Below are positions 1,063 to 33,284 of a stretch of 33,284 bases of DNA, piece by piece. Below the pieces are notes generated by a model, which had not been told where the DNA came from, did no database searches, and was given only the letters and a program-made list of their open reading frames with translations. Source of the stretch: Klebsormidium nitens (lineage: Eukaryota; Plantae; Klebsormidiophyceae); contig DF237558.1 of NCBI GenBank assembly GCA_000708835.1, positions 1-33,284 of the forward strand, written 5' to 3'. Numbering within the stretch: position 1 is the first letter of the stretch; every line of letters begins with the position of its first letter. The position numbers and the translations under genes were made by a program.

Positions 1063-1921
1063 ATGGGTGAGTTCAGAGCGTTTGTGGGCGGGCTGGCCTG
1101 GGCCACTGATGACAGGGCGTTGGAGCAGGCCTTCAGCCGCTTCGGCCAGGTCCTGGAGTCCAAGGTGCGCTACATCTGCCTCCTCAAAGCCTTGACCATT
1201 ACCGCTGGTGCTCGAGCTTTGTAAAGCTTGGGCTGTCTCCGCTGCTCATGGTGGTCAACTGCTGTTATTGCTCGTAAAGGCTGGTTTGTGCTTACTGCGA
1301 ACAAGCCCAAGATGGTTCCACCTTCAAGAAGTTTGTTGTTTTGTAGTCTTCCATGCCCCTTTTGGTTATGCTTTAATATAGGATCAATTTATACAATGGT
1401 ATACATCAGTGCTCTCTGCATGGGTATTGCCGCTGTCACCTGCAACCATTTAAGCAGCGGCAATGGTTTGCCAATTGGTGCAGGGATTGGAGACCATACT
1501 CCATGCACAGTGCTGTATTGTAATTCGGCTTCCTCATCCTTTGACATCCTGCCTTTCATGGTCCTGCCAGGTCATCAGTGACCGCGAGACTGGGAGGTCA
1601 CGTGGTTTTGGCTTCGTCACTTTTGCCGACGAGAACGCTTTGAACGCTGCCATCACTGAGATGAACGGCTCTGAGTTGGAGGGCCGCCAGATCACCGTGA
1701 ACCAGGCGCAGTCTCGCTCCGGCGGCGGCGGCGGCGGCGGCCGTGGCGGCGGCTATGGCGGAGGTCGCGGAGGCTATGGCGGCGGTGGTTATGGCGGCGG
1801 CGGCGGCGGCTATGGTGCCGGCGGCGGCGGCTACGGTGGACAGGGTGGCTATGGTGGACAGGGTGGCGGCCAGGGTGGCTATGGTGGCCGTGGCGGCGGT
1901 GGCGGTGGGCAAGGCTGGTAA
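1063..1921 (+). CDS. GRP7: Glycine-rich RNA-binding protein (single RRM + Gly-rich tail), GRP7/GRP8-like; 2 exons, 150 aa
   Basis: Exon 1 1063-1164 reads [34 protein letters not shown] (RNP2). A GT-AG intron spans 1165-1570. Exon 2 1571-1921 reads [18 protein letters not shown] (RNP1)...ITVNQAQSR, then a GGYG-rich tail and TAA. Sequence and intron position match plant GRP7/GRP8 as I know them; GRP7 versus GRP8 cannot be distinguished. Confidence 0.93.
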
Positions 1922-7779: not shown

Positions 7780-8204
7780 GTAAACTTGCCTCTTTCAGAG
7801 CCTGCATCCTCCTATTAAACTGGAGTGTTTGGAGCTTCTTGGTTCAAGTAAAGTCTCCCTGCATATTATAAGTTAGGCCCCTCTTCCATCTAGCGGTCGG
7901 TCTTCCTTTCCTAAGTTCCCATTGGCCAAAACCCCCTTTTAATTAATAATACTAATACTAATAATAGTATACTAATACTATATAGTATTATTATATATAT
8001 ATAATATTACAATAACGGGAACAACACGCTTAAATATCCACGTGTTATTAGTGCCTAGGATGCTTTTTTACGCTGTTTTTATCCATCTAATACCATCCAA
8101 CTACCTCCGAAAAGCACGGGCGGAGTGTACATTGAGACCCCTCACATATTTAACCGTTACCACCCACCATAACCCTATTTTTAACCAATATTTAACCCCA
8201 TTCC

Positions 8205-8362
8205 GAGCACGTATATATTTTAACGGAGTCCTGGATCCCGCTAAAATATATACGTGCTCCAAGTCCACATTAAAATCCCTATTTGTAAGCAGTAATTAAC
8301 CCCACTCCTAGCACGTATATATTTTAAGTGAATCCAGGACTCCGCTAAAATATTCACGTGCT
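8205..8362. repeat. Two ~54-bp hairpin units arranged as inverted copies of each other
   Basis: Unit 1: GAGCACGTATATATTTTA (8205-8222) and TAAAATATATACGTGCTC (8242-8259) form perfect 18-bp arms. Unit 2 (8310-8362) has near-identical arms, and its spacer contains ATCCAGGACTCCG, the reverse complement of CGGAGTCCTGGAT in the unit 1 spacer. Confidence 0.9.
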
Positions 8363-8637
8363 CCGAGTCCTCAGAAAAAAAATTTGAATTTTATCCAGGG
8401 TGGGCGGGTGGGGCAGTATAATATATTTAATAAGGATTAAATTTCCTTCATTTGACGTCTTCCTGAATCCCCCACCAAAACCCCTACAGAATCTCTGGCT
8501 GATATCCTCACAAAAAAAATTTGAATTTCTCCCAGGGCGGGCGGGTAGGGTCGGTATATTGTCTTTCATCTGGATCTTTTTCAAGTCTTTTTGAATCCTG
8601 CACTTTATCACTTCAAAATCATCCTCCCGAATCCTCC

Positions 8638-8660
8638 AAAAAAAAATTTGAATTTTACTG
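8638..8660 (+). promoter_or_regulatory. Inward-facing A-tract/TGAATTTT motif in the TIR (candidate early promoter)
   Basis: AAAAAAAAATTTGAATTTTACTG lies ~43 bp before ATG 8703. The mirror copy at 33172-33194 lies ~45 bp before ATG 33127. Related copies occur at 8374-8392 and 8513-8528 and upstream of many internal genes. Confidence 0.6.
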
Positions 8661-8702
8661 CAGATTTAACTCCGTCTTATTACCCCAACGCGATCATATA
8701 CA

Positions 8703-11071: not shown

Positions 11072-12046
11072 CTATTTCTTGTTCACGTCAGGATCATAGT
11101 GAATCTGAGATTTCCTGTAGACCCTCTTCATTTCCTTATACATCCTATAAGTTGCACTTACGTCTACTCTAGGGTCGATAGGTACTGAGCAGTTCTCTGG
11201 ATCAGGACAGCAGTGAAGCATGTCAACATGGTCTTTACAGAACGGTAGTCCATTGAGGGAATACATAACCTGTTTAACTTTGCACCGTCCGAACATGCAA
11301 GGTGGTGAAAAATCCCCGTACTTAGCACCAAGTTCCCTGAACCGCTTTGCTTTGGGAAACTTAATCACTCCAACATTAGGCCACCGAGGTTGTTGCTGGG
11401 GTTGAGGATTGGGTTGCTGCTGGGGTTGGGGATTGGGTTGCTGCTGGGGTTGGGGATTGGGTTGCTGCTGGGGTTGGGGATTGGGTTGCTGCTGAGGTTG
11501 GGGATTGGGTTGCTGCTGGGGGTGCTGCTGGGGGTGCTGCTGGGGTTGCTCCTCTCCTTGGGGATTGGGTTGCTGCTCTGCTTGCTGCTCTCCCTGCTGC
11601 TGATTTACTTCTTCCCCGTCATCTCCTACTGATTCTTGGTCAGATCTGACCCCAAAATTCAGATGAGAACCATCTGGACGCTGAGTACCATCTATATAAA
11701 AGTTTCCTACGAGAAGTCGAAGCAATCTGACCAGGAAGTATGTGCGTGTTTGATAGATGTAGAGCCGTGCTTGAGCTGCAATTGTCTCGGGAGGAGTCAG
11801 TGGCTGGTGTCTGTTCTCTACAGAATACCAGAAGGCGTCGAACTCAGCATCTGCGAGAGCCCTCCTTAATCTAAAGCGGATTCGCCTTGCTGCCCAATAT
11901 GTGAACAGTCCAAGCAGCCAGCCGGCAAAGAACCATCCCAGCACTATCCTTGTTGCAGAATAATGCTCGCCATCCACAACGAACACATCCCATATCTGCT
12001 TCACGATATTTGGAGGGGCTGGACACTGCTGCTGAGAGTCCGCCAT
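11072..12046 (-). CDS. Predicted single-pass membrane protein with Q/P/N repeats and a Cys-rich C-terminus, ~324 aa
   Basis: First ATG at 12046 (MADSQQQ). Hydrophobic segment IVLGWFFAGWLLGLFTYWAA is followed by RRIRFRLRR, then (QQQPNPQP)x5 and a Cys/His cluster (CMFGRC...FCKDH...HCC...C). Confidence 0.7.
   Translation of the reverse strand: MADSQQQCPAPPNIVKQIWDVFVVDGEHYSATRIVLGWFFAGWLLGLFTYWAARRIRFRLRRALADAEFDAFWYSVENRHQPLTPPETIAAQARLYIYQTRTYFLVRLLRLLVGNFYIDGTQRPDGSHLNFGVRSDQESVGDDGEEVNQQQGEQQAEQQPNPQGEEQPQQHPQQHPQQQPNPQPQQQPNPQPQQQPNPQPQQQPNPQPQQQPNPQPQQQPRWPNVGVIKFPKAKRFRELGAKYGDFSPPCMFGRCKVKQVMYSLNGLPFCKDHVDMLHCCPDPENCSVPIDPRVDVSATYRMYKEMKRVYRKSQIHYDPDVNKK
11388..11580. repeat. 24-bp coding tandem repeat (QQQPNPQP) x5 plus degenerate units
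   Basis: gggttg(g/a)ggattgggttgctgct(g) units run in tandem from ~11398 to ~11518, flanked by 12-bp QQHP units. Confidence 0.9.
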
Positions 12047-12086
12047 TGTCCTTGCTTGCTCCTCGCAGAATGCCTTCCTCTTCGCA

Positions 12087-12226
12087 AATGGTTTCTCAGA
12101 ATGACTTGCTGGAAAGAATGGTTTCCCAGAAATCATTCTGCCCGTGAAACGATTTCCGCAAAACGATTCTGAGTCTCAAATGATTTTCAAAAATGATTTC
12201 CACCGTCAGATATTGACAAAATCATT
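12087..12226. repeat. Cluster of nine AAYGRYTY motifs upstream of the membrane-protein gene
   Basis: Copies at 12087, 12100, 12117, 12130 (reverse), 12148, 12162, 12179, 12192 and 12218 (reverse). TTTCCACCGTC also occurs twice. Confidence 0.6.
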
Positions 12227-14133: not shown

Positions 14134-14487
14134 TTATTTGACTGTTTTTTTCAACTTGTCTTCCAATCGTTTCTTCTTAGCGTGAGCTTTGTTCATCCTT
14201 TCGAGACTGACCCCCTCGTCGATAGCAAAGACTGAAGCAAGCATGTTTGCATAAGCGTCCTCGATCGAAGGGTCGAATTCCTTCAACTCTTTGAGTGCTC
14301 TCTCATGCCGTTCTTGTCTCTTATCCATTTCCAGCAATTCTTCCTTCGTAAACTCAGCACGCTCCGCGACTTTCGTTTCGCTCTCCACTTTGATTGCTTC
14401 GATCTCCTGCTCTATCTTTTGAATTTCCAGAGCGGTCTCTTCTTCCTTTAGAATGTCCAGCAGTGTGTCCTCACTTAGTTTAGTCAT
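14134..14487 (-). CDS. Hypothetical coiled-coil protein, ~117 aa
   Basis: ATG at 14487 (MTKLSEDTLL); E/K-rich heptad-like sequence. Confidence 0.7.
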   Translation of the reverse strand: MTKLSEDTLLDILKEEETALEIQKIEQEIEAIKVESETKVAERAEFTKEELLEMDKRQERHERALKELKEFDPSIEDAYANMLASVFAIDEGVSLERMNKAHAKKKRLEDKLKKTVK

Positions 14488-14512
14488 AGTTATTATATGA
14501 TGATAAAATAAA

Positions 14513-15391
14513 ATGACGATTAAGACGAAGTCGCTGAAGCATCTGGTGCTCAAGGAACTTAAAAACAATAAACCTTTGTACCAAGACGTCCCCTTCCCAA
14601 AAGATTTGTTTGTTCCTTATGGTTTGGTCTCGTTGATAGGAGGTCTTGGAAGTGGAAAGACGACCTACCTACTGAAGACGCTTCAGTTGTACGAGACAAC
14701 GAAGACCTTCGACAAGATCTTTTACTATTCGCCCACCATAGGTTATGAGGAAAAGCGTGAGTATCTGCCTGAGTGCACCGAGGTCTTTGAAGATTTCACC
14801 CTTGACCTGTTTTTAAAGCACAAAGAATTCATCAGAAAGGAGATCGAGGATTACAAGATTGTTATATACTACATGGAGATCTACTACAAAGCCATGAGAG
14901 GTCAGCATATATCACATTCTGAACAACTTATTCTCGAGAGCAACGACTACGAACCTATGACTACTGATTACAAGCATATGCCCTGCTTCTGTATGGTCTA
15001 TGATGACCTACAATCAAACAGATTGATTTATTCGCCTAACATGAAGACGTCCGTGAGTCAATTTTTTTTAAATTGTCGTCATTTCAATACCATGTGTATC
15101 TTCTCCTGCCAGACGTTTAAGAATGCCATTCCAAAACAATTGAAAAGCAATATTGCGGTCTACATCTTGTTTAAATGCAAAGCATTGAAGCAGCAAAAGG
15201 ATATTGCAGAAGATCTGGTCGGTGTATGTCCAGTTGAGACCTTCGTTGCGTGTTGGAACTGGGCTTGTGAGGTCAAGTACAGTGCTTTTGTGATGGACAG
15301 AAACGCTGACGAACACCTGATGTTTAGACGGAACTTCGACACTCAGATTATACTGGATGATAAGGACGTGAATTTTCATAAAGAAAAATAA
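14513..15391 (+). CDS. A32/FtsK-HerA family genome-packaging ATPase, 292 aa
   Basis: Walker A GGLGSGKT, Walker B CMVYDD, arginine-finger motif CRHFN, then FSCQ (conserved Q) - the layout of PLV/NCLDV packaging ATPases. Confidence 0.92.
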   Translation: MTIKTKSLKHLVLKELKNNKPLYQDVPFPKDLFVPYGLVSLIGGLGSGKTTYLLKTLQLYETTKTFDKIFYYSPTIGYEEKREYLPECTEVFEDFTLDLFLKHKEFIRKEIEDYKIVIYYMEIYYKAMRGQHISHSEQLILESNDYEPMTTDYKHMPCFCMVYDDLQSNRLIYSPNMKTSVSQFFLNCRHFNTMCIFSCQTFKNAIPKQLKSNIAVYILFKCKALKQQKDIAEDLVGVCPVETFVACWNWACEVKYSAFVMDRNADEHLMFRRNFDTQIILDDKDVNFHKEK

Positions 15392-16139: not shown

Positions 16140-17474
16140 TCACCACACGACCCTCAAGTTCCTCCCTGCACCGACCTCAAGGATACCATCACAGCATGCG
16201 AAAACGTACGGAAGGTATGAACCAGTACCAGCCTGTCCATCCATGTTAGACCAACCAGAGTTGGGAGCAACAGGGGCGGGTAGGGTATAACCGCTCCCGA
16301 CCGTCTGCCAGGCGAGTTGTACTTGATTCCCTGACGTATCCGTTCCACTGATCCACCTGTCAGAAGGACGGCTCGGTTGATCAAAACTGACCATGTGGGC
16401 GAAATAATTTTTCTGGAAGTTAGTCAGGTTGCTCATGGTCGACGTAATATGTGTGCCCGCTATATCCTTGGTCAGACCAAGAACGTCAAGGTTGTTCTCA
16501 TAAATCTCGATGGGCGTCGCAGGCATTGATGGATATTGCACACTGTTCAGAGTGAAGACCGAGGTCGACACGTCATGTCCAACGGAGGTGAAAGCGGTAG
16601 AAGAACCTGTCACGGTGTCAAGGAAACCACCTTGATAGGTTGCACCATTCAAAAAACCACCGATCACATGAGAGAGACTCTTAGAGTTGACTGGAACTTT
16701 GATCGTCTGGTTGGGTGAGCCAGCAATAGCAGATGTTGAGAAGAAATTGTAGTACTTGAAAGGCAGTTGGAGAGGGGCACGAGACATCTCAGACTCGAGA
16801 TCGCTCATGTAGCCTGAGTCGCCAAAAGACCACATGTCTACCGTGCACTTCAGGTTATTCAGAATGACGTTCTGGAAACCGCTTACGGAAGGAAGGTAAA
16901 GTTCGCTGTTGCTGGCACTCATCTTCAGAGCATTGATCCAGGGTTGAGCCACGGTCAGAGCAACACGTACCTCACCAATGACCTGCGTCGAGATGACACG
17001 GGGTTGGATGGACTCGAGCACTTCGCCGAAGTTGGTTAGGCAGAAGGTCGTCGAGGTATTGGCAGTTCCTACAGCAGGAGCAGCAGTTCCAGCAGGACGC
17101 ACGTCAGTTGCTTTGAGAAGAGCGTTGTTCTTGGTGAAACGCCTCTTGAACGTGTCGTTCGCCATCCAGTTCAATTTAATGTTGTTCAGAAGGTTCAGGT
17201 TCTGAGTTCCAGGCACTACTGCTGTACCATTGATCTGAAGTTGGATGTTGGTGAACAGAGACTCGACGTTCGGGGGTGCGAAGTTGGTCGAGTCGAGCTT
17301 GTAGTCAAAATAGAGGCGAAGGCTATCTAACGCAATCGTCCCTGAAGGAAGCACGAAGGTGATCGTCTGACCAGATTGCACGTTCTGGGTCTGGGTCGGG
17401 TAAAAGGTGAACTTGTTCTTTGAGAAGTCTTTTACGATCTGGCATCCGTACTTCAGAGAAGGATGGATAGGCAT
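16140..17474 (-). CDS. Major capsid protein (double jelly-roll, PLV type), 444 aa
   Basis: N-terminal SKNKFTFYP...GQTITFVLPSGTIALDSLRLYFD matches the PLV MCP pattern. Size, beta-rich composition, FTLNSVQYPS in the second roll, and proximity to the ATPase and penton agree. Confidence 0.88.
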   Translation of the reverse strand: MPIHPSLKYGCQIVKDFSKNKFTFYPTQTQNVQSGQTITFVLPSGTIALDSLRLYFDYKLDSTNFAPPNVESLFTNIQLQINGTAVVPGTQNLNLLNNIKLNWMANDTFKRRFTKNNALLKATDVRPAGTAAPAVGTANTSTTFCLTNFGEVLESIQPRVISTQVIGEVRVALTVAQPWINALKMSASNSELYLPSVSGFQNVILNNLKCTVDMWSFGDSGYMSDLESEMSRAPLQLPFKYYNFFSTSAIAGSPNQTIKVPVNSKSLSHVIGGFLNGATYQGGFLDTVTGSSTAFTSVGHDVSTSVFTLNSVQYPSMPATPIEIYENNLDVLGLTKDIAGTHITSTMSNLTNFQKNYFAHMVSFDQPSRPSDRWISGTDTSGNQVQLAWQTVGSGYTLPAPVAPNSGWSNMDGQAGTGSYLPYVFACCDGILEVGAGRNLRVVW

Positions 17475-18237: not shown

Positions 18238-18295
18238 TAAGGTCTCGAGAGAAAAAAATTGAATTTTACTTAGGATGGGAGGATAGCGAGACAAG

Positions 18296-19351
18296 ATGCC
18301 GTCGAGGTGCAAACACATTGGCAATGATGGGGTGAAATGCACCACTCAAGCTACATATGGTTTTCAACGACCGCCTCAAAGATGCGGAACGCATAAACAG
18401 ACAGGGATGAAGGATGTTCATAGCCGAAAATGCGGACATGATGGATGCGAATCATTAAAACCAAGTTTTAACGACGCTGGGAAGAAGACTGGGCGGCTAT
18501 GTGGAGAGCATAAAAAACCAGGAATGATAAACGTTGCTGAAAGAAGACGGTGCAGACATGATGGTTGTGTCAAGGTGTCATGCTTTAATGAGTCTGGACA
18601 GAAGAAGGGTATATTTTGTGAAACGCACGCACTGCCAGGAATGAAGGATGTTAGAAATTCTAAATGCAAACATGGTGGGTGCGAAATACAACCAAATTTC
18701 AACATTCCTGGAAAGAAGAAAGGTGAGTACTGTGAAACTCACGCTGATCCAGAAATGACAAATGTTAAGTCTCCACGATGCAAGTCCGACCATTGCAACA
18801 TGATCATTTCAAACAAGTTCGAAGGATATTGCTTTTACTGCTTCATCAACCTTCACCCCGACGAGCCACTCGTGAGAAATTGTCTGGTCAAGGAACTTGT
18901 TCTGAAAAAAGCCTTGAGCGAAGGGTTGAAAGACAACAGATTTGTTCACAACAAATCCATTCGGGTCGAGATCGAATATGGTATTTACTCCTACAAACGC
19001 CCCGACTTCTACTTCGAAGAAGACGACCATGTCATCATCATCGAAAACGACGAAAATCAACACAAAGATTCTCACTACTCCGACGAACCTGGAAGATATG
19101 ACGCCATCTGCAGAGCCCTGAAGAAGCGTGTCGTCGTTCTTCGCTTCAATCCCGACAAGTACCTCGACAAGGATCAGAATAGACATGTGTCATGCTTCGC
19201 TACAAACAAGGAGACCCGTATCATGTATTTGAAGAACAAACCTGAATACGAGAGGCGGGTTTCTAAACTCGTCGAGAGATTCCTGCACCACGCCAACAAT
19301 GCACCGACCAAGGAGTTCACGGAGGAGAAGTTGTTCTATGACGGTTATTGA
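18296..19351 (+). CDS. EsV-1-7-like Cys/His repeats fused to a PD-(D/E)XK (Vsr/DUF559-like) endonuclease, 351 aa; intact copy
   Basis: Four units of C-x4-C...FN...C-x2-H (one N-terminal variant plus three ~38-40-aa units), then CxxxxC...YCFYC, then RPDF...IIIENDENQH...VVVLRFNPD. AAAAAAATTGAATTTTAC at 18252-18269 lies just upstream. Confidence 0.82.
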   Translation: MPSRCKHIGNDGVKCTTQATYGFQRPPQRCGTHKQTGMKDVHSRKCGHDGCESLKPSFNDAGKKTGRLCGEHKKPGMINVAERRRCRHDGCVKVSCFNESGQKKGIFCETHALPGMKDVRNSKCKHGGCEIQPNFNIPGKKKGEYCETHADPEMTNVKSPRCKSDHCNMIISNKFEGYCFYCFINLHPDEPLVRNCLVKELVLKKALSEGLKDNRFVHNKSIRVEIEYGIYSYKRPDFYFEEDDHVIIIENDENQHKDSHYSDEPGRYDAICRALKKRVVVLRFNPDKYLDKDQNRHVSCFATNKETRIMYLKNKPEYERRVSKLVERFLHHANNAPTKEFTEEKLFYDGY

Positions 19352-21551
19352 TTTTTTTCCTCATAAGATTCCTTGGAAAATCCAGTTCATATAGACTGTC
19401 GGGTTTCCACTTATAGCGTTGATGTTGAAGACTATACCATTGCTCATGCTCGGGATACTGTAGTTGTTGACTGACATATTGTTGTTCATGAAGGATTGCT
19501 GTACAAACGTACCAGTTTGCCCAGCTAATCTACTGAGGTTGAGTGTTAGCATACACGAGACTGGATTAATCACAGTTGTTTTCATAAAGACCAGTAATTG
19601 ACCCATACAAGTCGAAGATCCGCTGCCCCAAATCTGCGAGGTATCGAGATACCCTTGCGTCGCCGTGCTGAATGTGATATACCCTCCTGGATTTGTGATG
19701 ATTACAGGCGTGCTGCCAACTTGATTGTAGCTCGGAATGTTGAAAGCATCATAACCGATTGAGAACCCGTTCGCAGAGTGAGAGGATGTTAATGAATTGT
19801 TCACGGCAGTTCGCACCGAACCCCCAGACGTAGCATTCACTGATGTCAGTGTTCCTGACGAACTTTGTGTAAGAGCATAACCAGTGGTGCTGAAACAGTT
19901 CACATTTCCAAAACTGGCGTCTCCACTGAAAGCACTACCTACTTGAGCCAGTTGTATAATCGCTCCGTTTCTAAATTTCGAACTACCATCATCGTACAAA
20001 ACGAGATTCGAAGCAGTTTGAGCAGAGTTCAACCAAACCATTTGAGGCTTCTGAGTGCATAGAACACCTGTTCCGTTGAGTTGAAGATAACCTTGAACAT
20101 TAAGTTGATTTGTCACGTTGACCATTCCTCCTACGTTCAAGTTTCCAAGATTTGAACAATTACCGTTGGTATCAACGGAGAGCAGATTAGACCATGTTGT
20201 ATAGTTCGAATTGAAGGGTTTACATACGTTGAAAGCAGCCGCAGAATAACTACCACTGATGACGGCTCTCACTTGACCACCAGCCCACTGACCAAATCCG
20301 TACCGATCACTTCCACCATAATTTGCAACAGTCATCCATCCAGGGTCTGAAGCAGGAAATTGAAGTCCTCCAGTAGCACATGTTGCAACTCCGTTGACGC
20401 AATTGGACGCGTTGATAGCGGCGTTCGATACGGTAGTGAAAGCGGGCGAGGTATTACTTAAAACCGCGGGTACACCTGTCAAGTAAGAGTATGCCAAGTT
20501 TCCTTGTAGCGTGGTACAGTTAACAGTTCCACCCACGTCTAACGTATACCCAGGTGAAGCGTTATTGATACCTACGTACCCAGTGGAATAGGGTATCGTA
20601 AGAGGTCTGAGACTGTTCGAAGCACCATTCGATGTTCCAGAGAATAACATGTAGTAAGAACTTCCGTCGTAGCGGTGTATCATGCTGTTGTTAGTTGAAC
20701 CATACCAGTAGCGTGTATGACCAGCACCATCATACCCAAACAGACTGTTAGACCCTGCTATTGTGTTTCCAGCGATAACATTCGAAGTTTGAATGAGATT
20801 TCTGACATAAAGGTTTCCCGTGTCGCAAGTTAGCGACATCATGCAGTTCTCAGCGATGTTCTCCCATATCCACCCTTGTTGTGTCCCATTTCCTGCCCTT
20901 ACTCTGACATGGTGAGAGGTACGTCCATCAAGACTCGTACATGCTGTATTTGATGCAGCACTCTTACCAGCACCAGACTGACACATATACATTGACCAAT
21001 TTGCATCTCCACTGTCCCAAAATCTGAGTCCTTTCTGATAACCCGTATCGCTTTGAGTGTTGATGCTAGTTATACCATACGAAGTAAGAGTGCCGCTATT
21101 AGACATATTTCCAGCAGCATTAAGAACTCCCGCAATGTTAACATTTCCAGAATTTGATAAAGTTGTACTTGCTATTGTTCCAGAATTAGAGAGAGTCGCC
21201 GATGAGATGAAACCACCCACCTGCAGGTTGCCCGCATTGGACAGATTACCTAGGAAAGTCGTGTCTCCAGTCCTACAATTGAAGAGATGTCTTTCTGTAG
21301 AGTCTATCAAACACCTGAAACTCAGTCCATACCAACTCGCAAGCCCCCCTTGATTTGATGACCCCCCTCCGTTGCTGCTAAAGGTTGCACCATCAACCCC
21401 GTTAGCCCACACATGTACACCAAAGTTCGTGTCGCTGTTTAGACCGACGCAAAAGTTGCTGGTGTACATTCTGAGAGTATTCGATGGCGTCTGCAGACTG
21501 TAGACCGAAAGCGACGTGTTTGAAATTCCGATATGACTAGACTGATTGTTA

Positions 21552-21735
21552 GAAGCGAAGTATGCCTGATTGGACGTGTACTGATACTGTGTTAGGGTAC
21601 TGTAAGATGCCAGACTGTTTGAACCGAAGTATGCCTGATTGGACGTGTACTGATATTGTGTTAGGGTACTGTAAGATGCCAGACTGTTCGAACCGAAGTA
21701 TGCCTGATTGGACGTGTATTGATATTGAGCAAGAC
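21552..21735. repeat. 69-bp (23-aa) tandem repeat in the fibre gene, ~2.6 copies
   Basis: CGAAGTATGCCTGATTGGACGTGTA occurs at 21556, 21625 and 21694; peptide TLTQYQYTSNQAYFGSNSLASYS. Confidence 0.92.
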
Positions 21736-22810
21736 TCGCAAATGAAGGTACTCCCGTCAAATAGCCCCAAGCAAGCGACCCCGCAAACATGGTCGCTACT
21801 GCAGTGCCGTTAACTTCTAAGGGATAACCTGGTGTGGTAGTGCCTATACCGAGACGCCCACCTACTGTAGCGTTGCCCGACACGTTTGCCGTTCCATTTA
21901 CATCGAGAGTCGCCGAGGGTGTAGTAGTACAGACCCCGAACCGTCCGTTGCCCATACAGTTGAATGATGCCGAACCAAGAGATTGTCCCCACATCCCTAT
22001 TGCTCCATAATTACTAGGACTTGCGTTCGAATAATATGAGAATGCATGCCAACTAGTATTGTAATTTGAAAGGGTGTTGACCCCTACGTTAAGCAGATGG
22101 TAACTGTTAGAATTCAGCGAAGGCGTGTAGAGTGATGACGAAATTCCGCTGGTTATGGTCATATTACTGGTTAAAGCGAGACCTCCAGAAATCGTGGTAG
22201 CACCAGCGGCGAGCGTCCCTGTGAACGTCGCGTTTCCTCCGACAGAGATGTTAGAGCCGAGAGTGAGGTTTGAGCGAATATTTACATGGTTATTCGACGT
22301 CTGAAGCCCGTTGAGTTGGAACAGACCGTTCGATGTGGTGGTCAGGCTATAGGTATTGAGGGTTAAATTTGAATTCTGATTAGAGTCCCTGTATACGATA
22401 CACGAGTCTTTGATGACAGTACTCCACTGTCCGATTTCCATGTATGAAGCTTGGTCTTTCAGTTTGATGAAACCTTGAGTAAAATTCATGAGGGTAGTTA
22501 GTCCACTGTCTGCAGACTGAAGCAGACTCGAGACAGCACCAGCCCCGTTGAAAGCTTGAAATGCACCGAAGCCTAAGCCCGCTGCTCCCAACACTGTTCC
22601 ACCGACAGCGAGGGCGTTGGTCGTAGAATCGAAACTGGGTTTATTTGTTAGACTGGAGTAGTCGATCGCGACTGAACTCAGTCTGTAATTCGAAAACGAA
22701 TTTGAAGAATATATGCCGATGTTGCTGGCGAAGACGCTTGTGTTCGATCCAAAGGTAGAGCGGTTTGTGTTGCTGTTGATTAGAGCATACGAGGAATTCG
22801 AAATCGTTGG

Positions 22811-23199
22811 AAAATTGTTTGACGACCATAAAGATGTGTTGCTTCCAAAATTTGCATTCGAGTAGACAGCATTTGAAAAGGTTGTGAAATTGTTGCTCGA
22901 CCAGACGTATTGCTTCCAAAATTTGCATTCGAGTAGACAGCGTTTGAAAAGGTTGTGAGATTATTGCTCGACCAGACAGACATATTGCTTCCAAAATTTG
23001 CATTCGAGTAGACAGTATTTGAAAAGGTTGTGAAATTATTGCTCGACCAGACAGAGGTGTTGCTTGACCAGACAGAGGTATTGCTTCCAAAATTAGCATT
23101 GCTGTAGATTGAGTTTGAGAATGTTGTGAAATAATTGCTCGACCAGACAGAGGTGTTGCTTCCAAAAGTTGCGTTGCTGTAGATTGAATTTGAGAAGGA
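22811..23199. repeat. 75-bp (25-aa) tandem repeat in the fibre gene, 5 copies
   Basis: Peptide unit TTFSN(S/T/A)(I/V)YSNANFGSNTSVWSSNNF. One unit has an extra 7-aa duplication and one carries the 4-nt deletion. Confidence 0.9.
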
Positions 23200-24176
23200 C
23201 GTAATCGTAGCAGTGGATGCAAGAGTATTAATCTGATTACTGGAGTAAGTAGCAGTGTTTGAGTCGTAAGCACGAAGGGGATAGAAAGTGTTAGACGTGA
23301 CAAAGGTCGGAATCAGATTTGAGCAGAAGTTGCCCGTAGTTTGAGCGGAGACGCTTTGGTTGGACGCAAAGACGCTCTGATTAGAAGTAAATACATAGCG
23401 AGGATAAATGTCATTGGAAAAACCTTGAATTGTAGTAAAAGATGAGTTGCTTAATGTGCTTATTGCACTGCTGTTGCTTGAAACAGAAGAAGCCAGACCC
23501 TGCACCTGATTCGAAATCGAAGAAAGTTGTCCTGAAGTCAGTGTACCCGTCAAGGTTAGATTCGACGATACAACCGACCCAACGGATAGTGCCGCAGCGA
23601 TAGAGACGTCTTGCAGAAACTCTGCACAATGGTTTACGCTATACGTAGGATCAATTTGAACACTACTGACTATGTTCGAACCATTTGAAGAAGTAGCGGA
23701 GAAAACGTACGAACCAGACGTAGGATTGATCTCGTTTGTCAGTGAGTACGAGAATTGTAAATTATCGTTGACGAAAAATTTGAGCGTATTTAGGGTTTGC
23801 CGAAGGGCGACGAGATTGTTGCTTGAGAGTATGAAAGGGTAAGTATTAGAGGTCAAGAGCAGATTCGACCCGCTGTATAGACTAGCGTTGCTTGTATACT
23901 GATTCAATCTAAGATAGTATTGGACGTTACTGGAATCTCCCCACATCAATTGATTAACGTTGCTCTGTCCTGTCTGATTGAGGTAGTAGCGGCAAAGGAA
24001 AGTATTTGCTGGAGCGACTGACAACATAGCGACTCCCGCCTGATTGCTGCCGTTTGCTAAGTAAATCAAATTGTTAGACAGTGTTGCAGCGTTTGACAAC
24101 GTTAGACTCATATTAAAGTATGAAAACACAAAAAAGAAGTTCGTTTGTCGAAATTATTTTCTCACATAATGATATA

Positions 24177-26436: not shown

Positions 26437-27291
26437 CTATTCTTCGAGTATAACGGTAATTCCTTCGTTTTTGAAAAACTTCTTCAATTGGTCGAATGAT
26501 ATAACGGCACTATTAAAATGTTGAATGTAACGTACATAACCGATACAATACCTCTGATGATTTCGATCGTACAATCTTTGCTTTTTAATCTGTCGAAGGA
26601 CACACGGATAATCATCCCCCAAAGTTGGTTTTATCTCGATGCTAATATTCGCTGATAGAAAGGAGCTACGCTTGCCAATAATAGGTTTATAGAACTCATG
26701 ATCGATCTCATTGTATAAGCAACCCAATTCTCCGATGGGTGTTTCTAGTTCCAATGAAAATTGCATATGTTCAAATAATTTACTCTTACGTATGTAAACG
26801 AAATCGTTTTTGGTTATCAATACGTCCGCCCCACTAGAGCATTCAAATTGAATCTTATAAGGCTTCTTGTCCATCCAGTATTCAAAGAAACATCCATTTT
26901 CAACGACTTTTTCAATCCGTATGAACAAATATGAGTCTTTTGTGATGAACTCACTCACTTTCCAGTCTTCTGTCTTTTCAAAGGCAGATTTAGTCTTCTT
27001 CAATAATTCGAGAGTCTTGTCTTTATGCTTTTCAAACAGAGCAGTAACATCGACATTGTGCAAACGCTTGAGAAAAGTCGACATAAAGTCATCATCCAGA
27101 AACTGTATCTGGATCGCGTTGTGATCGGGTGTTGGTGCATCGGTGCTTTGATTCGAAACGATGATGTTATACACGTTTTCGAACTTCTGAAGCCATGGTT
27201 GTTGCTTCAACCATTCACAGTATTTAACATCTGCAAGAAGTTCCGAAACAGGTTTACCTTTATGCTTTCCAAACTCTACCACTTCCTCCAT
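26437..27291 (-). CDS. FGKHKG-motif protein with a putative restriction-endonuclease-like C-terminus, ~284 aa
   Basis: N-terminal EFGKHKGKPVSELL..VKYCEWL (small DUF3820-like module); C-terminal FE..SGADV...SIEIKPTLGDDYPCVLRQIK resembles a PD-(D/E)XK fold. AAAAAAATTGAATTTTGC lies upstream (27312-27329). Confidence 0.6.
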   Translation of the reverse strand: MEEVVEFGKHKGKPVSELLADVKYCEWLKQQPWLQKFENVYNIIVSNQSTDAPTPDHNAIQIQFLDDDFMSTFLKRLHNVDVTALFEKHKDKTLELLKKTKSAFEKTEDWKVSEFITKDSYLFIRIEKVVENGCFFEYWMDKKPYKIQFECSSGADVLITKNDFVYIRKSKLFEHMQFSLELETPIGELGCLYNEIDHEFYKPIIGKRSSFLSANISIEIKPTLGDDYPCVLRQIKKQRLYDRNHQRYCIGYVRYIQHFNSAVISFDQLKKFFKNEGITVILEE

Positions 27292-27434
27292 CAGGATATT
27301 ATCCTTCTTCAGCAAAATTCAATTTTTTTCAATCTAAGAGCAATACTTACTTATACTTCCTCCTTCTTTGAATAATTCTAATACTTTAATCATTTATGTA
27401 ATGAAATAAGAAAAAAAGAGATGTCAAATAGAAT

Positions 27435-30118: not shown

Positions 30119-30571
30119 TCAAACGCATTTGTTTCTGGTAACCTTGCTGATCCTGAACCAGAACTCGGGTTCTAATTTGCCATCAATAATATCAGTGAGT
30201 GTAGCAACACTGTCAATGTTATCTTTCGCCTCTCCGTTATTGAATTTTGCGTGATATTCAACGGAATCAACTACAAAGATTGACTTCAGTTTCGTCACTT
30301 GGTTTGTGGCGTTTTGTTGAATATACTCGACCAAGTGACGCAACCCTCTTTTGTACACAGTGAGCCACCCGTAAATCATATGTTCTTTGAAGAATGCCTT
30401 CTGACCTGCTTTTGCTCCTATAAAATCATCCAGTTGCAAACGACACTTTTCAAGAAACACCATAGTCTCGTAAGGATCCATCTCTTTTATGAGATTTTCA
30501 GTGATTTCATCCATCTTAACTTCATCCTTGCTGAAGAAGACCAATCTCTGTTCGGGTGTAAGGGCATCCAT
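30119..30571 (-). CDS. Hypothetical protein, 150 aa
   Basis: ATG ORF with an A-tract/TTGAATTTTGC motif at 30601-30621, ~30 bp upstream. Confidence 0.7.
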   Translation of the reverse strand: MDALTPEQRLVFFSKDEVKMDEITENLIKEMDPYETMVFLEKCRLQLDDFIGAKAGQKAFFKEHMIYGWLTVYKRGLRHLVEYIQQNATNQVTKLKSIFVVDSVEYHAKFNNGEAKDNIDSVATLTDIIDGKLEPEFWFRISKVTRNKCV

Positions 30572-31914
30572 TTTCTAATGTTGATATCTTTCGACATTCG
30601 GCAAAATTCAATTTTTTTTTTCGAATGAGAACATAATATCCATTGTAAAATAACTTTTCTTCGGTGAATTCTTTCGTGGGGATGGTCTTGGCATGGTGCA
30701 AAAATCTCTTAATGAGAGTGTCAGTTCGTATCTCATAGTCTTTCTTGTTCTTGAGGTACATAACGCCTGTCTTCTTGTTCACTGCGAAGCAGCTCAAATG
30801 TCTGTTCTGCTCCTTATCGAGGTACTTGTCTGGGTTGAAGCGGAGCATCACTACAGGTCGAGTCCCCAAATTGAACATGATCTCCATGCTACGTCGGTTC
30901 TCGCACATCTCGTCCCTGTCGTTGTGCTGGTCTTCGTCGTTCTCGATGATGATAACATGCGTGAACATGTCGATCAGAAAGTCGGGGCGTCTGTCTCTGC
31001 AGCCCCCCGACCCATCCACGTCGATCCTCTTGTTGTAGGTAAACTCGTAATCCTTCAGGCGTTCTTTCAGTACTTCTTTGAGAGCACGCTCTTTGGTTAG
31101 ATAGTTTCGGACGGACTGGCTCGTCAGGAAACAGGTTGACATAGCAAAAGAAGCAGTAACCTTTATACTTTTTTTGTACACGTGTATCGCAGTGGTCAGA
31201 CTAGCATTTGGAATTAACAACGTCTTCCATGTCTACTTTTGCATGGTTTTGGCAAAATCGCCCCATCTTTTCGCCAACGTTGTTGAAAATTGGTTGTGTG
31301 TTACAACCCTCATGCTCGCACCTTTTGTTGACAACATCTTCCATACCTGATTTCTTATGATTTTCACAATATTTTCCCTTGGTCTCGCCTTTGCTGTTAA
31401 AAGTTGGTCGGATTTTGCATCCATCTTGTTTGCATCTCGAGTTTTTTACGTCATCCATACCTGGTTTTTTGTGTTTTTTACAGTATCGATCAGTCTTCTC
31501 AGTAGGGTTGTTGAAGTTTGGTTCGGTATTGCACCCAACGTGCTCGCATTTTTTGTTTACAACGTTTTCCATACCATCTGTTTTGTGTTTTCCACAATAT
31601 CGACCAGTCTTCTCATCAGGATTGTTGAACTTTGGTTGCGTCTTGCATCCCTCATGCTCGCATGTGGGTGAAACGAGATCTTCCATTCCTGATTTCTTGT
31701 GTTTTCCACAGTATCGCCCTTCGGTCTCATTAGGGTTATTGAATTTTGGTCGAATCTTGCATCCCTTATGTTCGCACCTTCTTTTCTCGACGACGTTTTC
31801 CATCCCTGGTTTTTTGTGTTTTCCACAAAATTGTGGTGGACATTGAAAACCCTGAGTCGCTCGAGTTCCACACCTCACTCCATCATCGCCGACATACTTG
31901 CACCTACTGACCAT
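30522..31914 (-). pseudogene. Second EsV-1-7-like repeat + PD-(D/E)XK nuclease gene, disrupted between the repeat array and the nuclease
   Basis: True start at ATG 31914 (MVSRCKYVGDDG). Six Cys/His units, five of them 38 aa. In-frame TAG at 31203-31201 (C*SDHC versus CKSDHC in the intact paralog), then an extra C at ~31113 shifts into the nuclease frame (RPDF...IIIENDEDQH...LRFNPD...KLFYNGY). Confidence 0.85.
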
Positions 31915-31971
31915 CTTGCTAACGGTACTCGGGATCGAAGCAAAATTCAAATTTTTTTCCAACCAGACATA

Positions 31972-33145: not shown

Positions 33146-33284
33146 GGGGTAATAAGACGGTCGGAAGTCTCCAGTAAAATTCAAATTTTTTTTTGGAGGA
33201 TTCGGGAGGATGATTTTGAAGTGATAAAGTGCAGGATTCAAAAAGACTTGAAAAAGATCCAGATGAAAGACAATATACCGCCCC
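33146..33284 (-). repeat. Right terminal inverted repeat (truncated by the window end)
   Basis: 33172-33280 is the exact reverse complement of 8552-8660. Confidence 0.93.

What the first reader, a model, noticed from the sequence alone, without database searches (positions are those of the whole stretch)
18296..19351. Natural modular 'zinc-finger nuclease': variable Cys/His repeat array fused to an endonuclease
The intact copy has 4 Cys/His units and the paralog at 31914 has 6, with the same N-terminal cap, linker (CxxDHC...YCFxC) and nuclease. Positions between the conserved C/C/C/H, FN, G and M residues vary from unit to unit, as expected for repeats that each read a few bases. Under an early-type promoter, such nucleases could drive homing or cut a helper giant-virus or competitor genome. 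DNA binding by EsV-1-7-like repeats is my inference, not established.
Basis: partly seen in the sequence, partly recalled or inferred. Interest (0 to 1): 0.8.

Follow-up and report, generated by a model that had tools for sequence, protein, structure and literature searches.

The report
Zinc-repeat nuclease of an endogenous virus
A gene in a virus-like element buried in the genome of the alga Klebsormidium joins four zinc-binding repeats to a domain that looks built to cut DNA. It belongs to a very large, unnamed family of giant-virus genes that appear and disappear next to capsid genes the way selfish "homing" nucleases do, which hints, without proving it, that the repeats aim the cut.

Summary
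Window 18296-19351 (+) is one intact 351-aa ORF. It has four EsV-1-7 Cys/His units (Pfam E 1.4e-42), a four-Cys knuckle, and a C-terminal domain modelled at pLDDT 93. That domain's only solved-structure neighbours are PD-(D/E)XK nucleases, but the matches are weak and no Pfam family reaches threshold. The second copy has six units and is broken by one stop and one frameshift.

The gene is not a rarity. A profile search gave 862 representative proteins at E<=1e-30, almost all unnamed and mostly from giant-virus contigs. They share the knuckle, the nuclease module and its acidic/His residues. The N-terminal array varies in kind and number: EsV-1-7-like, a CxxC..CxH repeat, or, in one relative, a canonical C2H2 finger array.

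In giant viruses the gene often sits beside the major capsid gene, and it is present or absent at that slot between viruses with 91-96% identical capsid proteins. A related virus-like contig lacks it at the window's slot.

Best reading: a free-standing, homing-like endonuclease aimed by its zinc array. Cleavage, DNA binding by EsV-1-7 units and mobility are inferred, not shown.

The parts
18248..18267 (+). Promoter-like motif (A-run followed by TTGAATTTT) about 28 nt upstream of the ATG. It contains the 8-mer AAAATTGA.
   Evidence: Repeat families D10/D11, sequence, 12 matches against 0.29 expected. The same motif lies upstream of the second copy and of the L001 orthologue. The 8-mer is named as the Megamimivirinae early motif in PMC11464507. 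Expression timing here is untested.
18296..19351 (+). Intact gene of 351 aa: zinc-repeat array, Cys knuckle and PD-(D/E)XK-like domain.
   Evidence: ORF, Pfam, AF2 model with mean pLDDT 92.3.
18308..18430 (+). N-terminal cap unit (residues 5-45; C, C, C, H with a longer first spacing).
   Evidence: Counted by Pfam as one of the 4 EsV_1_7_cys stretches. Aligns to the cap of the second copy.
18431..18778 (+). Three canonical EsV-1-7 units (residues 46-161; 40, 38 and 38 aa; C-x4-C-x16-C-x2-H-x12). The array region, residues 1-161, has a net charge of +15.
   Evidence: 117-nt DNA period (family D13).
18779..18865 (+). Linker with a four-Cys knuckle (C162, C167, C179, C182) directly before the nuclease-like domain.
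   Evidence: All four Cys are conserved in at least 90% of 104 relatives, whatever the array type. A knuckle is present in 214 of 266 family proteins.
18866..19348 (+). C-terminal PD-(D/E)XK-like domain (residues 191-351).
   Evidence: AF2 model of residues 158-351: pLDDT 93.5, pTM 0.83. The top Foldseek PDB hits are almost all PD-(D/E)XK nucleases, but weak (E at least 1.7e-3). Pfam PDDEXK_4 is below threshold.
19001..19063 (+). Putative active-site stretch: P236, D237 ... E250-x-D252-E253-x2-H256.
   Evidence: E253 is invariant. P236, D237, E250, D252 and H256 are conserved in at least 90% of 104 relatives. 142 of the 152 top profile hits carry the motif.
19139..19156 (+). Second conserved block L-R-F-N-P-D (residues 282-287) on the fourth core strand.
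   Evidence: N285 and D287 are invariant. R283, F284 and P286 are conserved in at least 90%.
30522..31914 (-). Broken second copy: cap plus five units, the same knuckle and the same C-terminal domain. It has one in-frame stop and one frameshift, and its last ORF runs 37 codons past the normal end.
   Evidence: The pieces were searched apart and never joined.
31942..31954 (-). The same promoter-like motif about 27 nt upstream of the second copy's start.
8548..8686 (.). Left arm of the terminal inverted repeat of the host element. The element has GC of about 42% against about 60% in the host flank.
   Evidence: Inverted repeat I1, 139 nt, 95% complementary. GC profile.
33146..33284 (.). Right arm of the terminal inverted repeat. 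It runs off the end of the window.

Best explanation
The gene encodes a free-standing, homing-like site-specific DNA endonuclease of a polinton-like or virophage-like element integrated in the Klebsormidium nitens genome.

Proposed mechanism:
(a) Each EsV-1-7 unit folds round one zinc ion (C, C, C, H). The basic four-unit array docks on DNA and supplies target choice. This step is inferred.
(b) A conserved four-Cys knuckle ties the array to a PD-(D/E)XK-type domain. Its D237, E250, D252, E253 and H256 bind divalent metal and cut DNA. The fold and the conservation are shown; the activity is inferred.
(c) The gene is transcribed from a mimivirid-early-like promoter motif. The motif is shown; the timing is inferred.
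(d) As in phage free-standing homing endonucleases, cutting a genome that lacks the gene, followed by repair from a genome that has it, would spread the gene. That would explain its patchy presence beside conserved genes, its several copies per genome and its decayed copies. The distribution is shown; the process is inferred.

My estimates for the separate steps: active DNA nuclease about 0.75; array determines the DNA target about 0.5; selfish, homing-type biology about 0.45.
For: Architecture and fold:
- 4 EsV_1_7_cys units.
- Confident AF2 models.
- The best solved-structure neighbours are almost all PD-(D/E)XK nucleases: McrC, the R2 restriction-like endonuclease, Bax1, bunyavirus cap-snatching endonuclease, PspGI, Hjc and RecU (probability 0.87-0.99).
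- The strand and helix order, with PD at the start of one strand and E-x-D at the end of the next, fits that fold.
- The weak Pfam hits that recur among 104 relatives come from the same clan: DUF559 in 8, Hjc in 4, MTES_1575 in 3, PvuRts1I_N in 2.
- BFVD gives full-length matches to giant-virus proteins, several named 'Endonuclease' and two named 'DUF559 domain-containing'.

Conservation:
- E253, N285, D287 and R321 are invariant.
- D237, E250, D252, H256 and the four knuckle Cys are conserved in at least 90% of 104 relatives.

Modularity:
- The same module carries EsV-like arrays of 0-12 units or CxxC..CxH arrays of 0-15 units.
- In L042:9086-10588 it carries a canonical C2H2 array (zf-H2C2_2 E 5.9e-52, zf-C2H2 in 7 stretches), with a C-terminal part 31% identical to the window's (E 1e-26).
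- Within one genome the nuclease modules of paralogues are 71-83% identical, while their arrays are 43-56% identical and differ in length. In the window the figures are 59% and 48%.
- Variable unit positions are few and clustered: positions 4, 9, 11, 14, 24 and 25 across 299 units.

Distribution:
- The direct neighbour is the giant-virus major capsid gene in 25 of 81 cases, and in 10 of 34 cases on contigs of at least 50 kb. Other neighbours are an HNH endonuclease, VLTF3 and an RNA-polymerase subunit.
- Among 79 loci chosen by capsid similarity alone, only 2 carry the gene next to the capsid gene.
- L006 (filled) and L088 (empty) have flanks 91% and 87% identical in DNA, with 1881 bp against 199 bp between them.
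- Among relatives of the window's element, L001 has the gene at the same slot and L086/L087 do not.
- One copy in the window is decayed.
- Several copies can occur on one giant-virus contig.
Against: - No activity or binding data exist for any member.
- The fold matches are weak (Foldseek E 1.7e-3 to 0.1, TM 0.3-0.4).
- No sequence match to any solved structure, and no Pfam, NCBIfam or PHROG family above threshold.
- The canonical Lys of the PD-(D/E)xK motif is an Asp here.
- EsV-1-7 repeats have never been shown to bind DNA. In Ectocarpus they occur without any other Pfam domain (bioRxiv 10.64898/2026.04.27.720984).
- Variable positions between structural residues occur in any repeat family.
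- The window and L001 keep the gene at the same slot while their core genes are 69-87% identical. That fits vertical descent as well as mobility.
- Present/absent patterns can arise from deletion alone.
- The 80 giant-virus loci were the best matches to the query and may be one clade with inherited synteny.
- The copy sits in an endogenous element that may be silent.
Confidence: 0.5

Rival explanations
1. It is a weapon rather than a selfish gene. The nuclease is made early and cuts the DNA of the host, the helper giant virus or a competing element, giving the element an advantage without copying itself into the cut site.
For: The nuclease-like fold and conserved residues are the same as for the best explanation. 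An early-type promoter motif lies upstream. The gene keeps a stable position in two related elements. The Tetraselmis study proposes that restriction-modification genes carried by related elements act against competing viruses (PMC9356565).
Against: This does not explain why giant viruses carry the gene preferentially next to their own capsid gene, with filled and empty alleles among close relatives. It also does not explain why copies decay. No partner immunity or modification gene was seen beside it.
Confidence: 0.2
2. It is a DNA-binding regulator or chromatin protein. The zinc array, the knuckle and a nuclease-derived domain bind DNA, for example at promoters, without cutting. The conserved acidic residues would serve metal-dependent binding only.
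For: The one studied EsV-1-7 protein, Ectocarpus IMM, is a developmental regulator, and the repeat is proposed to be a new zinc finger (bioRxiv 10.1101/2024.02.19.579948). The array is basic, with net charge +15. The canonical catalytic Lys is missing.
Against: A nearly complete set of acidic and His residues is conserved across hundreds of very divergent members, which is typical of active enzymes. The patchy, multi-copy and decaying distribution is unlike that of a core regulator.
Confidence: 0.1
3. It is a target-site nuclease for integration. The element has no recognisable integrase, and this protein would make the break in host DNA through which the element enters the algal chromosome, in the way the R2 element pairs zinc fingers with a restriction-like nuclease.
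For: No integrase or recombinase domain was found in any ORF of at least 120 aa in the element, although it is integrated and has inverted terminal repeats. R2 proteins are among the best structural neighbours. The Tetraselmis study speculated that zinc-finger genes of related elements might serve integration (PMC9356565).
Against: Most family members are in giant-virus genomes, at several copies each, next to capsid genes. That has no link to integration. The related contigs L086 and L087 show no copy at the syntenic slot or anywhere in the 4.7-11 kb sequenced.
Confidence: 0.08
4. The arrays do not read DNA. They bind protein or RNA, or simply stabilise the protein, and any target choice lies in the knuckle and the nuclease domain.
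For: Treble-clef-like zinc modules often mediate protein contacts. A weak LIM-domain match covers the knuckle region. Thirty-two of 266 members have few or no array units, and short forms of about 190-200 aa exist. The full-length model has pTM of only 0.65, so the position of the array relative to the nuclease is undefined.
Against: In one relative a canonical poly-C2H2 array, of the kind with the conserved inter-finger linkers typical of DNA-binding fingers, fills the same position. The arrays are strongly basic. The short forms may be fragments of metagenome contigs.
Confidence: 0.12

Closest known systems
Unnamed giant-virus proteins with the same full-length fold, for example UniProt A0A481Z7X3 'Endonuclease' of Pithovirus LCPAC304, A0A3G4ZWE6 of Faunusvirus, A0A2R8FFX4 of Brazilian cedratvirus, A0A2P0VP85 of Tetraselmis virus 1, and EsV-1-115 (BFVD)
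   Same: Zinc-repeat array plus the same C-terminal domain over the full length (Foldseek E 1e-16 to 1e-29, 18-31% identity). They belong to the same family as the window's gene.
   Different: They lie in giant-virus genomes, not in a roughly 25-kb polinton-like element inside an alga. None is characterised. Their names are automatic annotations. Array type and unit number differ.
Free-standing homing endonucleases of phages and eukaryotic viruses, and Vsr-like or PD-(D/E)XK homing endonucleases such as those reported in mirusvirus introns (PMC12768974)
   Same: A nuclease gene that stands alone between conserved genes, has a patchy distribution among close relatives, neighbours other endonuclease genes (HNH), and occurs as multiple and decayed copies.
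   Different: Cleavage and homing are not shown here. The targeting module would be a tandem zinc-repeat array, not the usual helix-turn-helix or similar domains. The gene is not inside an intron or intein.
R2 retrotransposon protein (PDB 9dou, 9nl2, 8gh6): zinc fingers plus a Cys/His knuckle plus a restriction-like endonuclease
   Same: Among the best structural neighbours of the C-terminal module (probability 0.97-0.98). Same logic: zinc-finger targeting, and a zinc knuckle directly before a PD-(D/E)XK domain.
   Different: There is no reverse transcriptase here. The match is weak (E 3e-3, 13% identity), so this is a resemblance and not demonstrated kinship.
Engineered zinc-finger nucleases and type IIS enzymes (a C2H2 array or recognition domain plus the FokI cleavage domain)
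   Same: A separable DNA-targeting array joined to a PD-(D/E)XK-fold cleavage domain. The relative L042 even has a true C2H2 array.
   Different: The window's array is of EsV-1-7 type, not C2H2. FokI was not among the structural neighbours listed. Nothing is known here about dimerisation or cutting distance.
EsV-1-7 repeat proteins (Ectocarpus virus EsV-1-7; the brown-alga regulator IMM; Pfam PF19114)
   Same: The same repeat, well above the Pfam threshold, with the C-x4-C-x16-C-x2-H-x12 spacing. The EsV-1-7 protein itself matches the array structurally (E 1.1e-14, 32% identity).
   Different: Those proteins are arrays with no other Pfam domain. Here the array is fused to a nuclease-like module.

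Membership tests
EsV-1-7 cysteine-rich repeat (Pfam PF19114) | Match to the Pfam model above its gathering score | tested here: met
   143.7 bits against a cut-off of 25, in 4 stretches. The second copy's array piece scores 220.8 bits in 6 stretches.
EsV-1-7 cysteine-rich repeat (Pfam PF19114) | Tandem units with C-x4-C-x16-C-x2-H-x12 spacing | tested here: met
   Units of 40, 38 and 38 aa in the intact copy and five of 38 aa in the second copy. 299 units with this exact spacing occur in 77 family proteins.
EsV-1-7 cysteine-rich repeat (Pfam PF19114) | Zinc binding by the C, C, C and H residues | not testable with these tools
PD-(D/E)XK nuclease superfamily | Core fold alpha-beta-beta-beta-alpha-beta | tested here: met
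   The AF2 model (pLDDT 93.5) has the expected element order. The Foldseek PDB top hits are almost all PD-(D/E)XK nucleases with probability up to 0.99. The matches are weak, however (E at least 1.7e-3, TM 0.3-0.4).
PD-(D/E)XK nuclease superfamily | Acidic residues of the motif (D on strand 2, D or E on strand 3) | tested here: met
   D237 and E250 are conserved in at least 90% of 104 relatives.
PD-(D/E)XK nuclease superfamily | Lys of the (D/E)-x-K motif | tested here: not met
   That position is D252, conserved in at least 90% of relatives. It is followed by invariant E253 and by H256. This is a variant motif.
PD-(D/E)XK nuclease superfamily | Match to a curated family model above threshold | tested here: not met
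   PDDEXK_4 scores 14-16 bits against a cut-off of 22.3. Nothing was found in NCBIfam or PHROGs. PADLOC gave only one weak hit.
DUF559 / Vsr-like endonucleases (Pfam PF04480) | Match to the Pfam model above threshold | tested here: not met
   DUF559 is the commonest weak nuclease hit, in 8 of 104 relatives, but the best E-value is 0.016 and none passes threshold. Two BFVD neighbours are named 'DUF559 domain-containing' (E 1.6e-4 and 7.7e-4).
DUF559 / Vsr-like endonucleases (Pfam PF04480) | Profile-profile or structural superposition on a solved Vsr or DUF559 structure | not tested
   No comparator sequence or structure could be fetched without typing it from memory. No Vsr entry appeared among the Foldseek hits listed.
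Free-standing homing endonuclease genes | Present or absent at one slot among close relatives | tested here: met
   Giant viruses: L006, L008, L029 and L089 are filled and L088 is empty, with 91-96% identical capsid proteins and DNA flanks 87-91% identical. The gene lies next to the capsid gene in 2 of 79 capsid-selected loci. The window's lineage: present in the window and L001, absent in L086 and L087. Loss by deletion is not excluded.
Free-standing homing endonuclease genes | Position beside conserved essential genes | tested here: met
   The capsid gene is the direct neighbour in 25 of 81 cases, and in 10 of 34 on contigs of at least 50 kb. VLTF3 and an RNA-polymerase subunit are also neighbours. 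In the window itself the neighbours have no assigned function.
Free-standing homing endonuclease genes | Site-specific cleavage of the allele that lacks the gene, and gene conversion | not testable with these tools
   No sequence-based proxy could be computed, beyond the observation that homology between L006 and L088 ends about 130 nt inside the 3' end of the capsid gene.
Zinc-finger nuclease in the strict sense (C2H2 array plus cleavage domain) | C2H2 beta-beta-alpha fingers | tested here: not met
   The window's protein has no C2H2 Pfam match. The feature is met only in the relative L042:9086-10588.
R2-type restriction-like endonuclease proteins | Reverse transcriptase domain in the same protein | tested here: not met
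   Pfam finds no such domain in the 351-aa protein. The resemblance is limited to the knuckle and nuclease.

The most novel reading that the evidence does not exclude
EsV-1-7 units, and the commoner CxxC..CxH units, are modular DNA-reading zinc modules. A handful of hypervariable surface positions in each unit (4, 9, 11, 14, 24, 25) would specify a few bases. On this reading the family is a natural, highly diversified set of array-programmed nucleases spreading through giant viruses and their parasites. By extension, the roughly 2000 EsV-1-7 proteins of brown algae, including the developmental regulator IMM, would be sequence-specific DNA-binding factors.
Probability: 0.25. Interest if true: 0.9.

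Novelty: new variant of a known kind. Interest (0 to 1): 0.62.

Why it matters
If the reading is right, three things follow.

First, a very large block of 'hypothetical proteins' in giant viruses and polinton-like elements gets a function: selfish, array-aimed endonucleases that sit next to capsid and transcription genes. This block comprises hundreds to thousands of sequence clusters, and the nuclease module has no family model.

Second, the EsV-1-7 repeat gets its first functional context. Its biochemical role has been open since it was found in the brown-alga developmental regulator IMM. Here it occupies the position that a canonical C2H2 DNA-binding array occupies in a sister protein. That makes 'EsV-1-7 repeats bind DNA' a concrete claim that structural work can check.

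Third, nature would have made zinc-array nucleases many times over, with arrays that differ in kind and number on one cleavage chassis. That is of interest for understanding how DNA-recognition modules evolve.

If the reading is wrong, the result is still useful. The gene is an ordinary member of a widespread viral family and not a special feature of this window.

Tried and rejected
- Sequence searches of the whole protein and of family profiles against solved structures found nothing, or only chance zinc-ribbon and LIM matches.
- PHROGs and NCBIfam found nothing. PADLOC gave one weak, unconvincing hit.
- The phage collection gave no match for the protein or for the neighbouring 444-aa gene.
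- The word search with the single protein found only 3 relatives and badly understated the family. The exhaustive profile search was needed.
- That profile also kept array columns (326 positions), so its total of 6950 hits includes array-only proteins. I use the 862 hits at E<=1e-30 and the motif count (142 of 152) instead.
- I tried to show that the conserved 444-aa gene near the target is the capsid gene. Pfam, solved structures and a profile-profile comparison with giant-virus capsid proteins all failed, so that stays open.
- An IMG/VR scan with that gene found no relatives.
- No tRNA gene marks the insertion.
- Placement in the DUF559/Vsr-like group remains a lead only.
- I rejected the idea that the two window copies are part of the terminal repeats. 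They are only 48-59% identical in protein, and they lie inside the element.
Full report
WHAT IS THERE. Window 18296-19351 (+) is a single ORF of 351 codons with an ATG start. Pfam finds four EsV_1_7_cys stretches in it (E 1.4e-42, 143.7 bits against a cut-off of 25). It also finds a sub-threshold PDDEXK_4 match in the C-terminal half. The layout is as follows:
- a cap unit (residues 5-45);
- three canonical units of 40, 38 and 38 aa with C-x4-C-x16-C-x2-H-x12 spacing (residues 46-161);
- a linker with four Cys (C162, C167, C179, C182);
- a domain of about 160 aa.

The array is basic (net charge +15) and the rest is neutral. A second copy lies on the minus strand between 30522 and 31914. It has a cap plus five units (Pfam: six stretches), the same linker and the same C-terminal domain. 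The arrays are 47-48% identical and the C-terminal domains 59%. That copy is broken by one in-frame stop and one frameshift, and its last ORF runs 37 codons past the normal end. I searched its pieces apart and made no joined or mended version.

WHERE IT IS. The first ~7.5 kb of the window have 56-69% GC and hold an RRM/glycine-rich gene fragment. From about 8 kb onward GC is about 42%. A 139-nt inverted repeat (95% complementary) joins 8548-8686 to 33146-33284, the last base of the window. A Pox_A32-type packaging ATPase lies at 14513-15391. So the gene sits in a virus-like element of about 25 kb, of polinton-like or virophage-like type, with terminal inverted repeats. A look-up showed that window 5948-28237 is identical to Klebsormidium nitens scaffold DF237558.1 (assembly GCA_000708835.1) at the same coordinates. 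The host is thus a streptophyte alga. No integrase-type domain was seen in any ORF of at least 120 aa, and there is no tRNA gene.

THE C-TERMINAL DOMAIN. No curated family claims it (Pfam, NCBIfam, PHROGs, PADLOC), and no solved structure matches by sequence. AF2 models are confident: whole protein pLDDT 92.3, residues 158-351 pLDDT 93.5 with pTM 0.83. Foldseek against the PDB returns almost only PD-(D/E)XK-fold nucleases at the top: McrC, the restriction-like endonuclease of R2 retrotransposons, Bax1, bunyavirus cap-snatching endonucleases, PspGI, Hjc and RecU. Probabilities reach 0.99, but E-values are weak (1.7e-3 and worse) and TM-scores are 0.3-0.4. The order of strands and helices fits that fold, with P236-D237 at the start of one strand and E250-x-D252 at the end of the next. 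In 104 relatives, E253, N285, D287 and R321 are invariant. P236, D237, E250, D252, H256, R283, F284, P286 and the four linker Cys are conserved in at least 90%. The canonical Lys is replaced by Asp, so this is a variant motif. Among the weak Pfam hits of relatives, DUF559 is the commonest nuclease family (8 of 104, best E 0.016), followed by Hjc, MTES_1575 and PvuRts1I_N. Two BFVD neighbours are named 'DUF559 domain-containing'. I conclude that this is a PD-(D/E)XK-type nuclease domain, probably near the Vsr/DUF559 branch. The fold and the conservation are shown. Activity is inferred.

THE FAMILY. The word search found three relatives. They were already instructive:
- P0001 has five EsV units and lies in a contig syntenic with the window's element.
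- P0002 is a nuclease-module ORF that follows an ORF of at least nine EsV-like units on a giant-virus-like contig (L002 5667-7409). One in-frame stop separates the two ORFs, on a contig labelled as low coverage.
- P0003 has the same linker and domain behind a different Cys repeat.

Because the family scans left the domain open, I ran the exhaustive profile search. It gave 6950 hits at E<=1e-3 and 862 at E<=1e-30. The profile kept array columns, so the larger figure includes array-only proteins. Of the 152 proteins then in hand (the 150 listed hits plus the two other word-search relatives), 142 carry the PD...E-x-D-E-x2-H motif. A profile word search gave 635 proteins at E<=1e-10, all either unnamed or called 'hypothetical protein'. 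BFVD gives full-length structural matches to proteins of pithoviruses, marseilleviruses, cedratvirus, Faunusvirus, Tetraselmis virus 1, Heterosigma akashiwo virus and EsV-1. Several of these are auto-named 'Endonuclease' or 'C2H2-type domain-containing protein'. An IMG/VR scan confirmed at least 162 loci, mostly giant-virus bins and contigs of up to 548 kb, with up to three copies on one contig.

MODULARITY. In 266 family proteins with the core motif, the N-terminal part is:
- a CxxC..CxH repeat array in 210;
- an EsV-like array in 24;
- few or no units in 32.

The knuckle is present in 214. In a mixed set of 230 proteins, unit numbers run from 0 to 12 for the EsV type and from 0 to 15 for the other type. 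One relative, L042:9086-10588 (501 aa, a single ORF), carries a canonical poly-C2H2 array (zf-H2C2_2 E 5.9e-52, zf-C2H2 in seven stretches). Its array sits in front of the same knuckle and domain, which is 31% identical to the window's (E 1e-26). Paralogues within one giant-virus contig have nuclease modules 71-83% identical, but arrays 43-56% identical and of different length. Over 299 distinct 38-aa EsV-type units, positions 1, 6, 10, 12, 13, 22, 23, 26, 27, 31 and 33 are conserved. Positions 4, 9, 11, 14, 24 and 25 are the most variable. That is one face of the strand before the conserved F-N pair, plus the two residues between the third Cys and the His. This is what a recognition surface would look like. 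It is also what any repeat with a structural core shows, so it does not by itself prove base reading. The strongest argument for a DNA-targeting role of the array is positional: a bona fide DNA-binding array type occupies the same place in a sister protein.

DISTRIBUTION. In the 81 family genes from the IMG/VR loci, the direct neighbour is:
- the giant-virus major capsid gene in 25 (10 of 34 on contigs of at least 50 kb);
- an HNH endonuclease gene in 10;
- VLTF3 in 4;
- an Rpb3/11-like subunit in 4.

These 80 loci were chosen by the family gene and may be related to one another. I therefore fetched 80 loci by the capsid protein alone (72-96% identity). Of 79 with a capsid ORF, only 2 have the family gene next to it and 76 have none within 6 kb. 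An HNH gene follows the capsid gene in 18. L006, L008, L029 and L089 read VLTF3 | capsid | family gene | HNH. L088, whose capsid protein is 96% identical to that of L006, reads VLTF3 | capsid | HNH. In DNA, L006 and L088 are 91% and 87% identical on the two sides, with 1881 bp against 199 bp in between. Homology stops about 130 nt inside the 3' end of the capsid gene. In the window's own lineage, L001 keeps the gene at the same slot: it is 39% identical overall while core genes are 69-87% identical, and it has five units against four. L086 and L087, whose 444-aa gene is 52% identical, have a 62-nt gap there and no family gene. Patchy presence beside conserved genes, company of another endonuclease gene, several copies per genome and a decayed copy are the classic marks of free-standing homing endonuclease genes. 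They do not exclude repeated loss.

PROMOTER-LIKE MOTIF. An A-run followed by TTGAATTTT lies 27-32 nt upstream of four ATGs: the target, the second copy, the gene starting at 30571, and the ORF ending at 27315. It also recurs in the terminal repeats. There are 12 matches against 0.29 expected. The same motif lies in front of the L001 orthologue. The target's copy contains AAAATTGA, which PMC11464507 gives as the early regulatory motif of Megamimivirinae. The bare 8-mer alone is not significantly enriched in the window (6 against 2.55 expected). Early expression is thus plausible but untested.

LITERATURE. In the library searched, the EsV-1-7 repeat is described as a possible new class of zinc finger of unknown biochemical function. 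It is greatly expanded in brown algae, and in Ectocarpus it has no other Pfam domain in the same proteins. A study of Tetraselmis polinton-like elements notes 'Zn finger' genes of unknown role (PMC9356565). Vsr-like and PD-(D/E)XK homing endonucleases are reported in mirusvirus introns (PMC12768974). I found no paper describing this array-knuckle-nuclease family. The library is incomplete, so this absence is weak evidence.

VERDICT. The gene is a member of a very large, unnamed viral family that combines interchangeable zinc-repeat arrays with one nuclease chassis. In giant viruses it shows a distribution typical of selfish, homing-like endonucleases. The kind is known: a modular site-specific nuclease, a free-standing homing endonuclease. 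The targeting module and the nuclease subfamily are a new variant. Nuclease activity, DNA binding by EsV-1-7 units, any recognition code, and any action on helper or competitor genomes remain inferences.

STEPS LEFT OUT AND SLIPS. I made no joined, mended or consensus sequence of the broken copy or of any relative, and I give no places of breaks. I did not fetch any comparator by name or from memory, so the DUF559/Vsr placement rests only on what the tools returned. There were two slips. First, in my reasoning I recalled short motif patterns of the Vsr/DUF559 family from memory, as a lead. It is also a substring of the repeat that one search had already shown at 18243-18288.

Noticed in passing
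window 1-33284 (L085 = window 5948-28237): The window is Klebsormidium nitens scaffold DF237558.1 (GCA_000708835.1) from base 1. In the stretch examined (L085), the gene list returned by the look-up shows only two gene models over the virus-like element. One of them, the spliced model KFL_006090040, is built across virus-type ORFs. The target gene is not called.
   Followed up: partly
window 8170-8690 and 33146-33284: The terminal region holds tandem copies of 103-137 nt, each carrying the promoter-like motif (8363, 8500, 8627), and a 57-nt hairpin-forming inverted repeat (8202-8366). The right arm runs off the window, so the full length of the terminal repeat is unknown.
   Followed up: partly
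window 19361-22594 (-): A 1077-aa ORF next to the target is rich in Ser, Asn, Gly and Thr and contains three 69-nt tandem repeats (21544-21750). It looks fibre-like but has no Pfam match. The homologue in L086 is 1437 aa.
   Followed up: no
window 16140-17474 (-): A conserved 444-aa gene (69% identical in L001, 52% in L086) has no assignment by Pfam, solved structures or profile comparison with giant-virus capsid proteins. It could be the capsid gene of the element, but this is unverified.
   Followed up: yes
window 11362-11625 and 22756-23198: Two further coding tandem repeats: a 12-nt period inside ORF 11072-12136, and a period of about 75 nt inside ORFs 22641-24129.
   Followed up: no
window 1463-1921 (+): The host-side ORF has an RRM domain (E 2.1e-12) followed by a Gly/Tyr-rich tail encoded by GGC repeats. 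It is probably an exon of a glycine-rich RNA-binding protein.
   Followed up: partly
L042:9086-10588: A giant-virus contig encodes a single 501-aa ORF with about 8-10 canonical C2H2 fingers, the same Cys knuckle and the same nuclease-like domain, directly after a major capsid gene. In architecture it is a natural C2H2 zinc-finger array fused to a nuclease-like domain.
   Followed up: yes
L006 6787-11256 against L088 6001-8785: The slot between the capsid gene and an HNH endonuclease gene is filled by the family gene in some viruses and empty in a virus with a 96% identical capsid protein. The last ~40 codons of the capsid gene differ between the filled and empty alleles.
   Followed up: partly
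L088-L167 (capsid-selected giant-virus loci): An HNH_3 endonuclease gene directly follows the major capsid gene in 18 of 79 loci, and VLTF3 precedes it in 32. The 3' side of this capsid gene looks like a hotspot for endonuclease genes.
   Followed up: partly
P0003 and most of P0004-P0277: The commonest array in the family is a repeat of about 20 aa with CxxC..CxH spacing and no Pfam model. It is present in 210 of 266 members.
   Followed up: partly
window 26437-27315 (-) and 14134-14568 (-): Weak, sub-threshold Pfam hints: ExoX-like C-terminal motif (E 4e-4) and FtsK/SpoIIIE N-terminal region (E 8e-4). The second ORF overlaps the start of the packaging ATPase gene.
   Followed up: no
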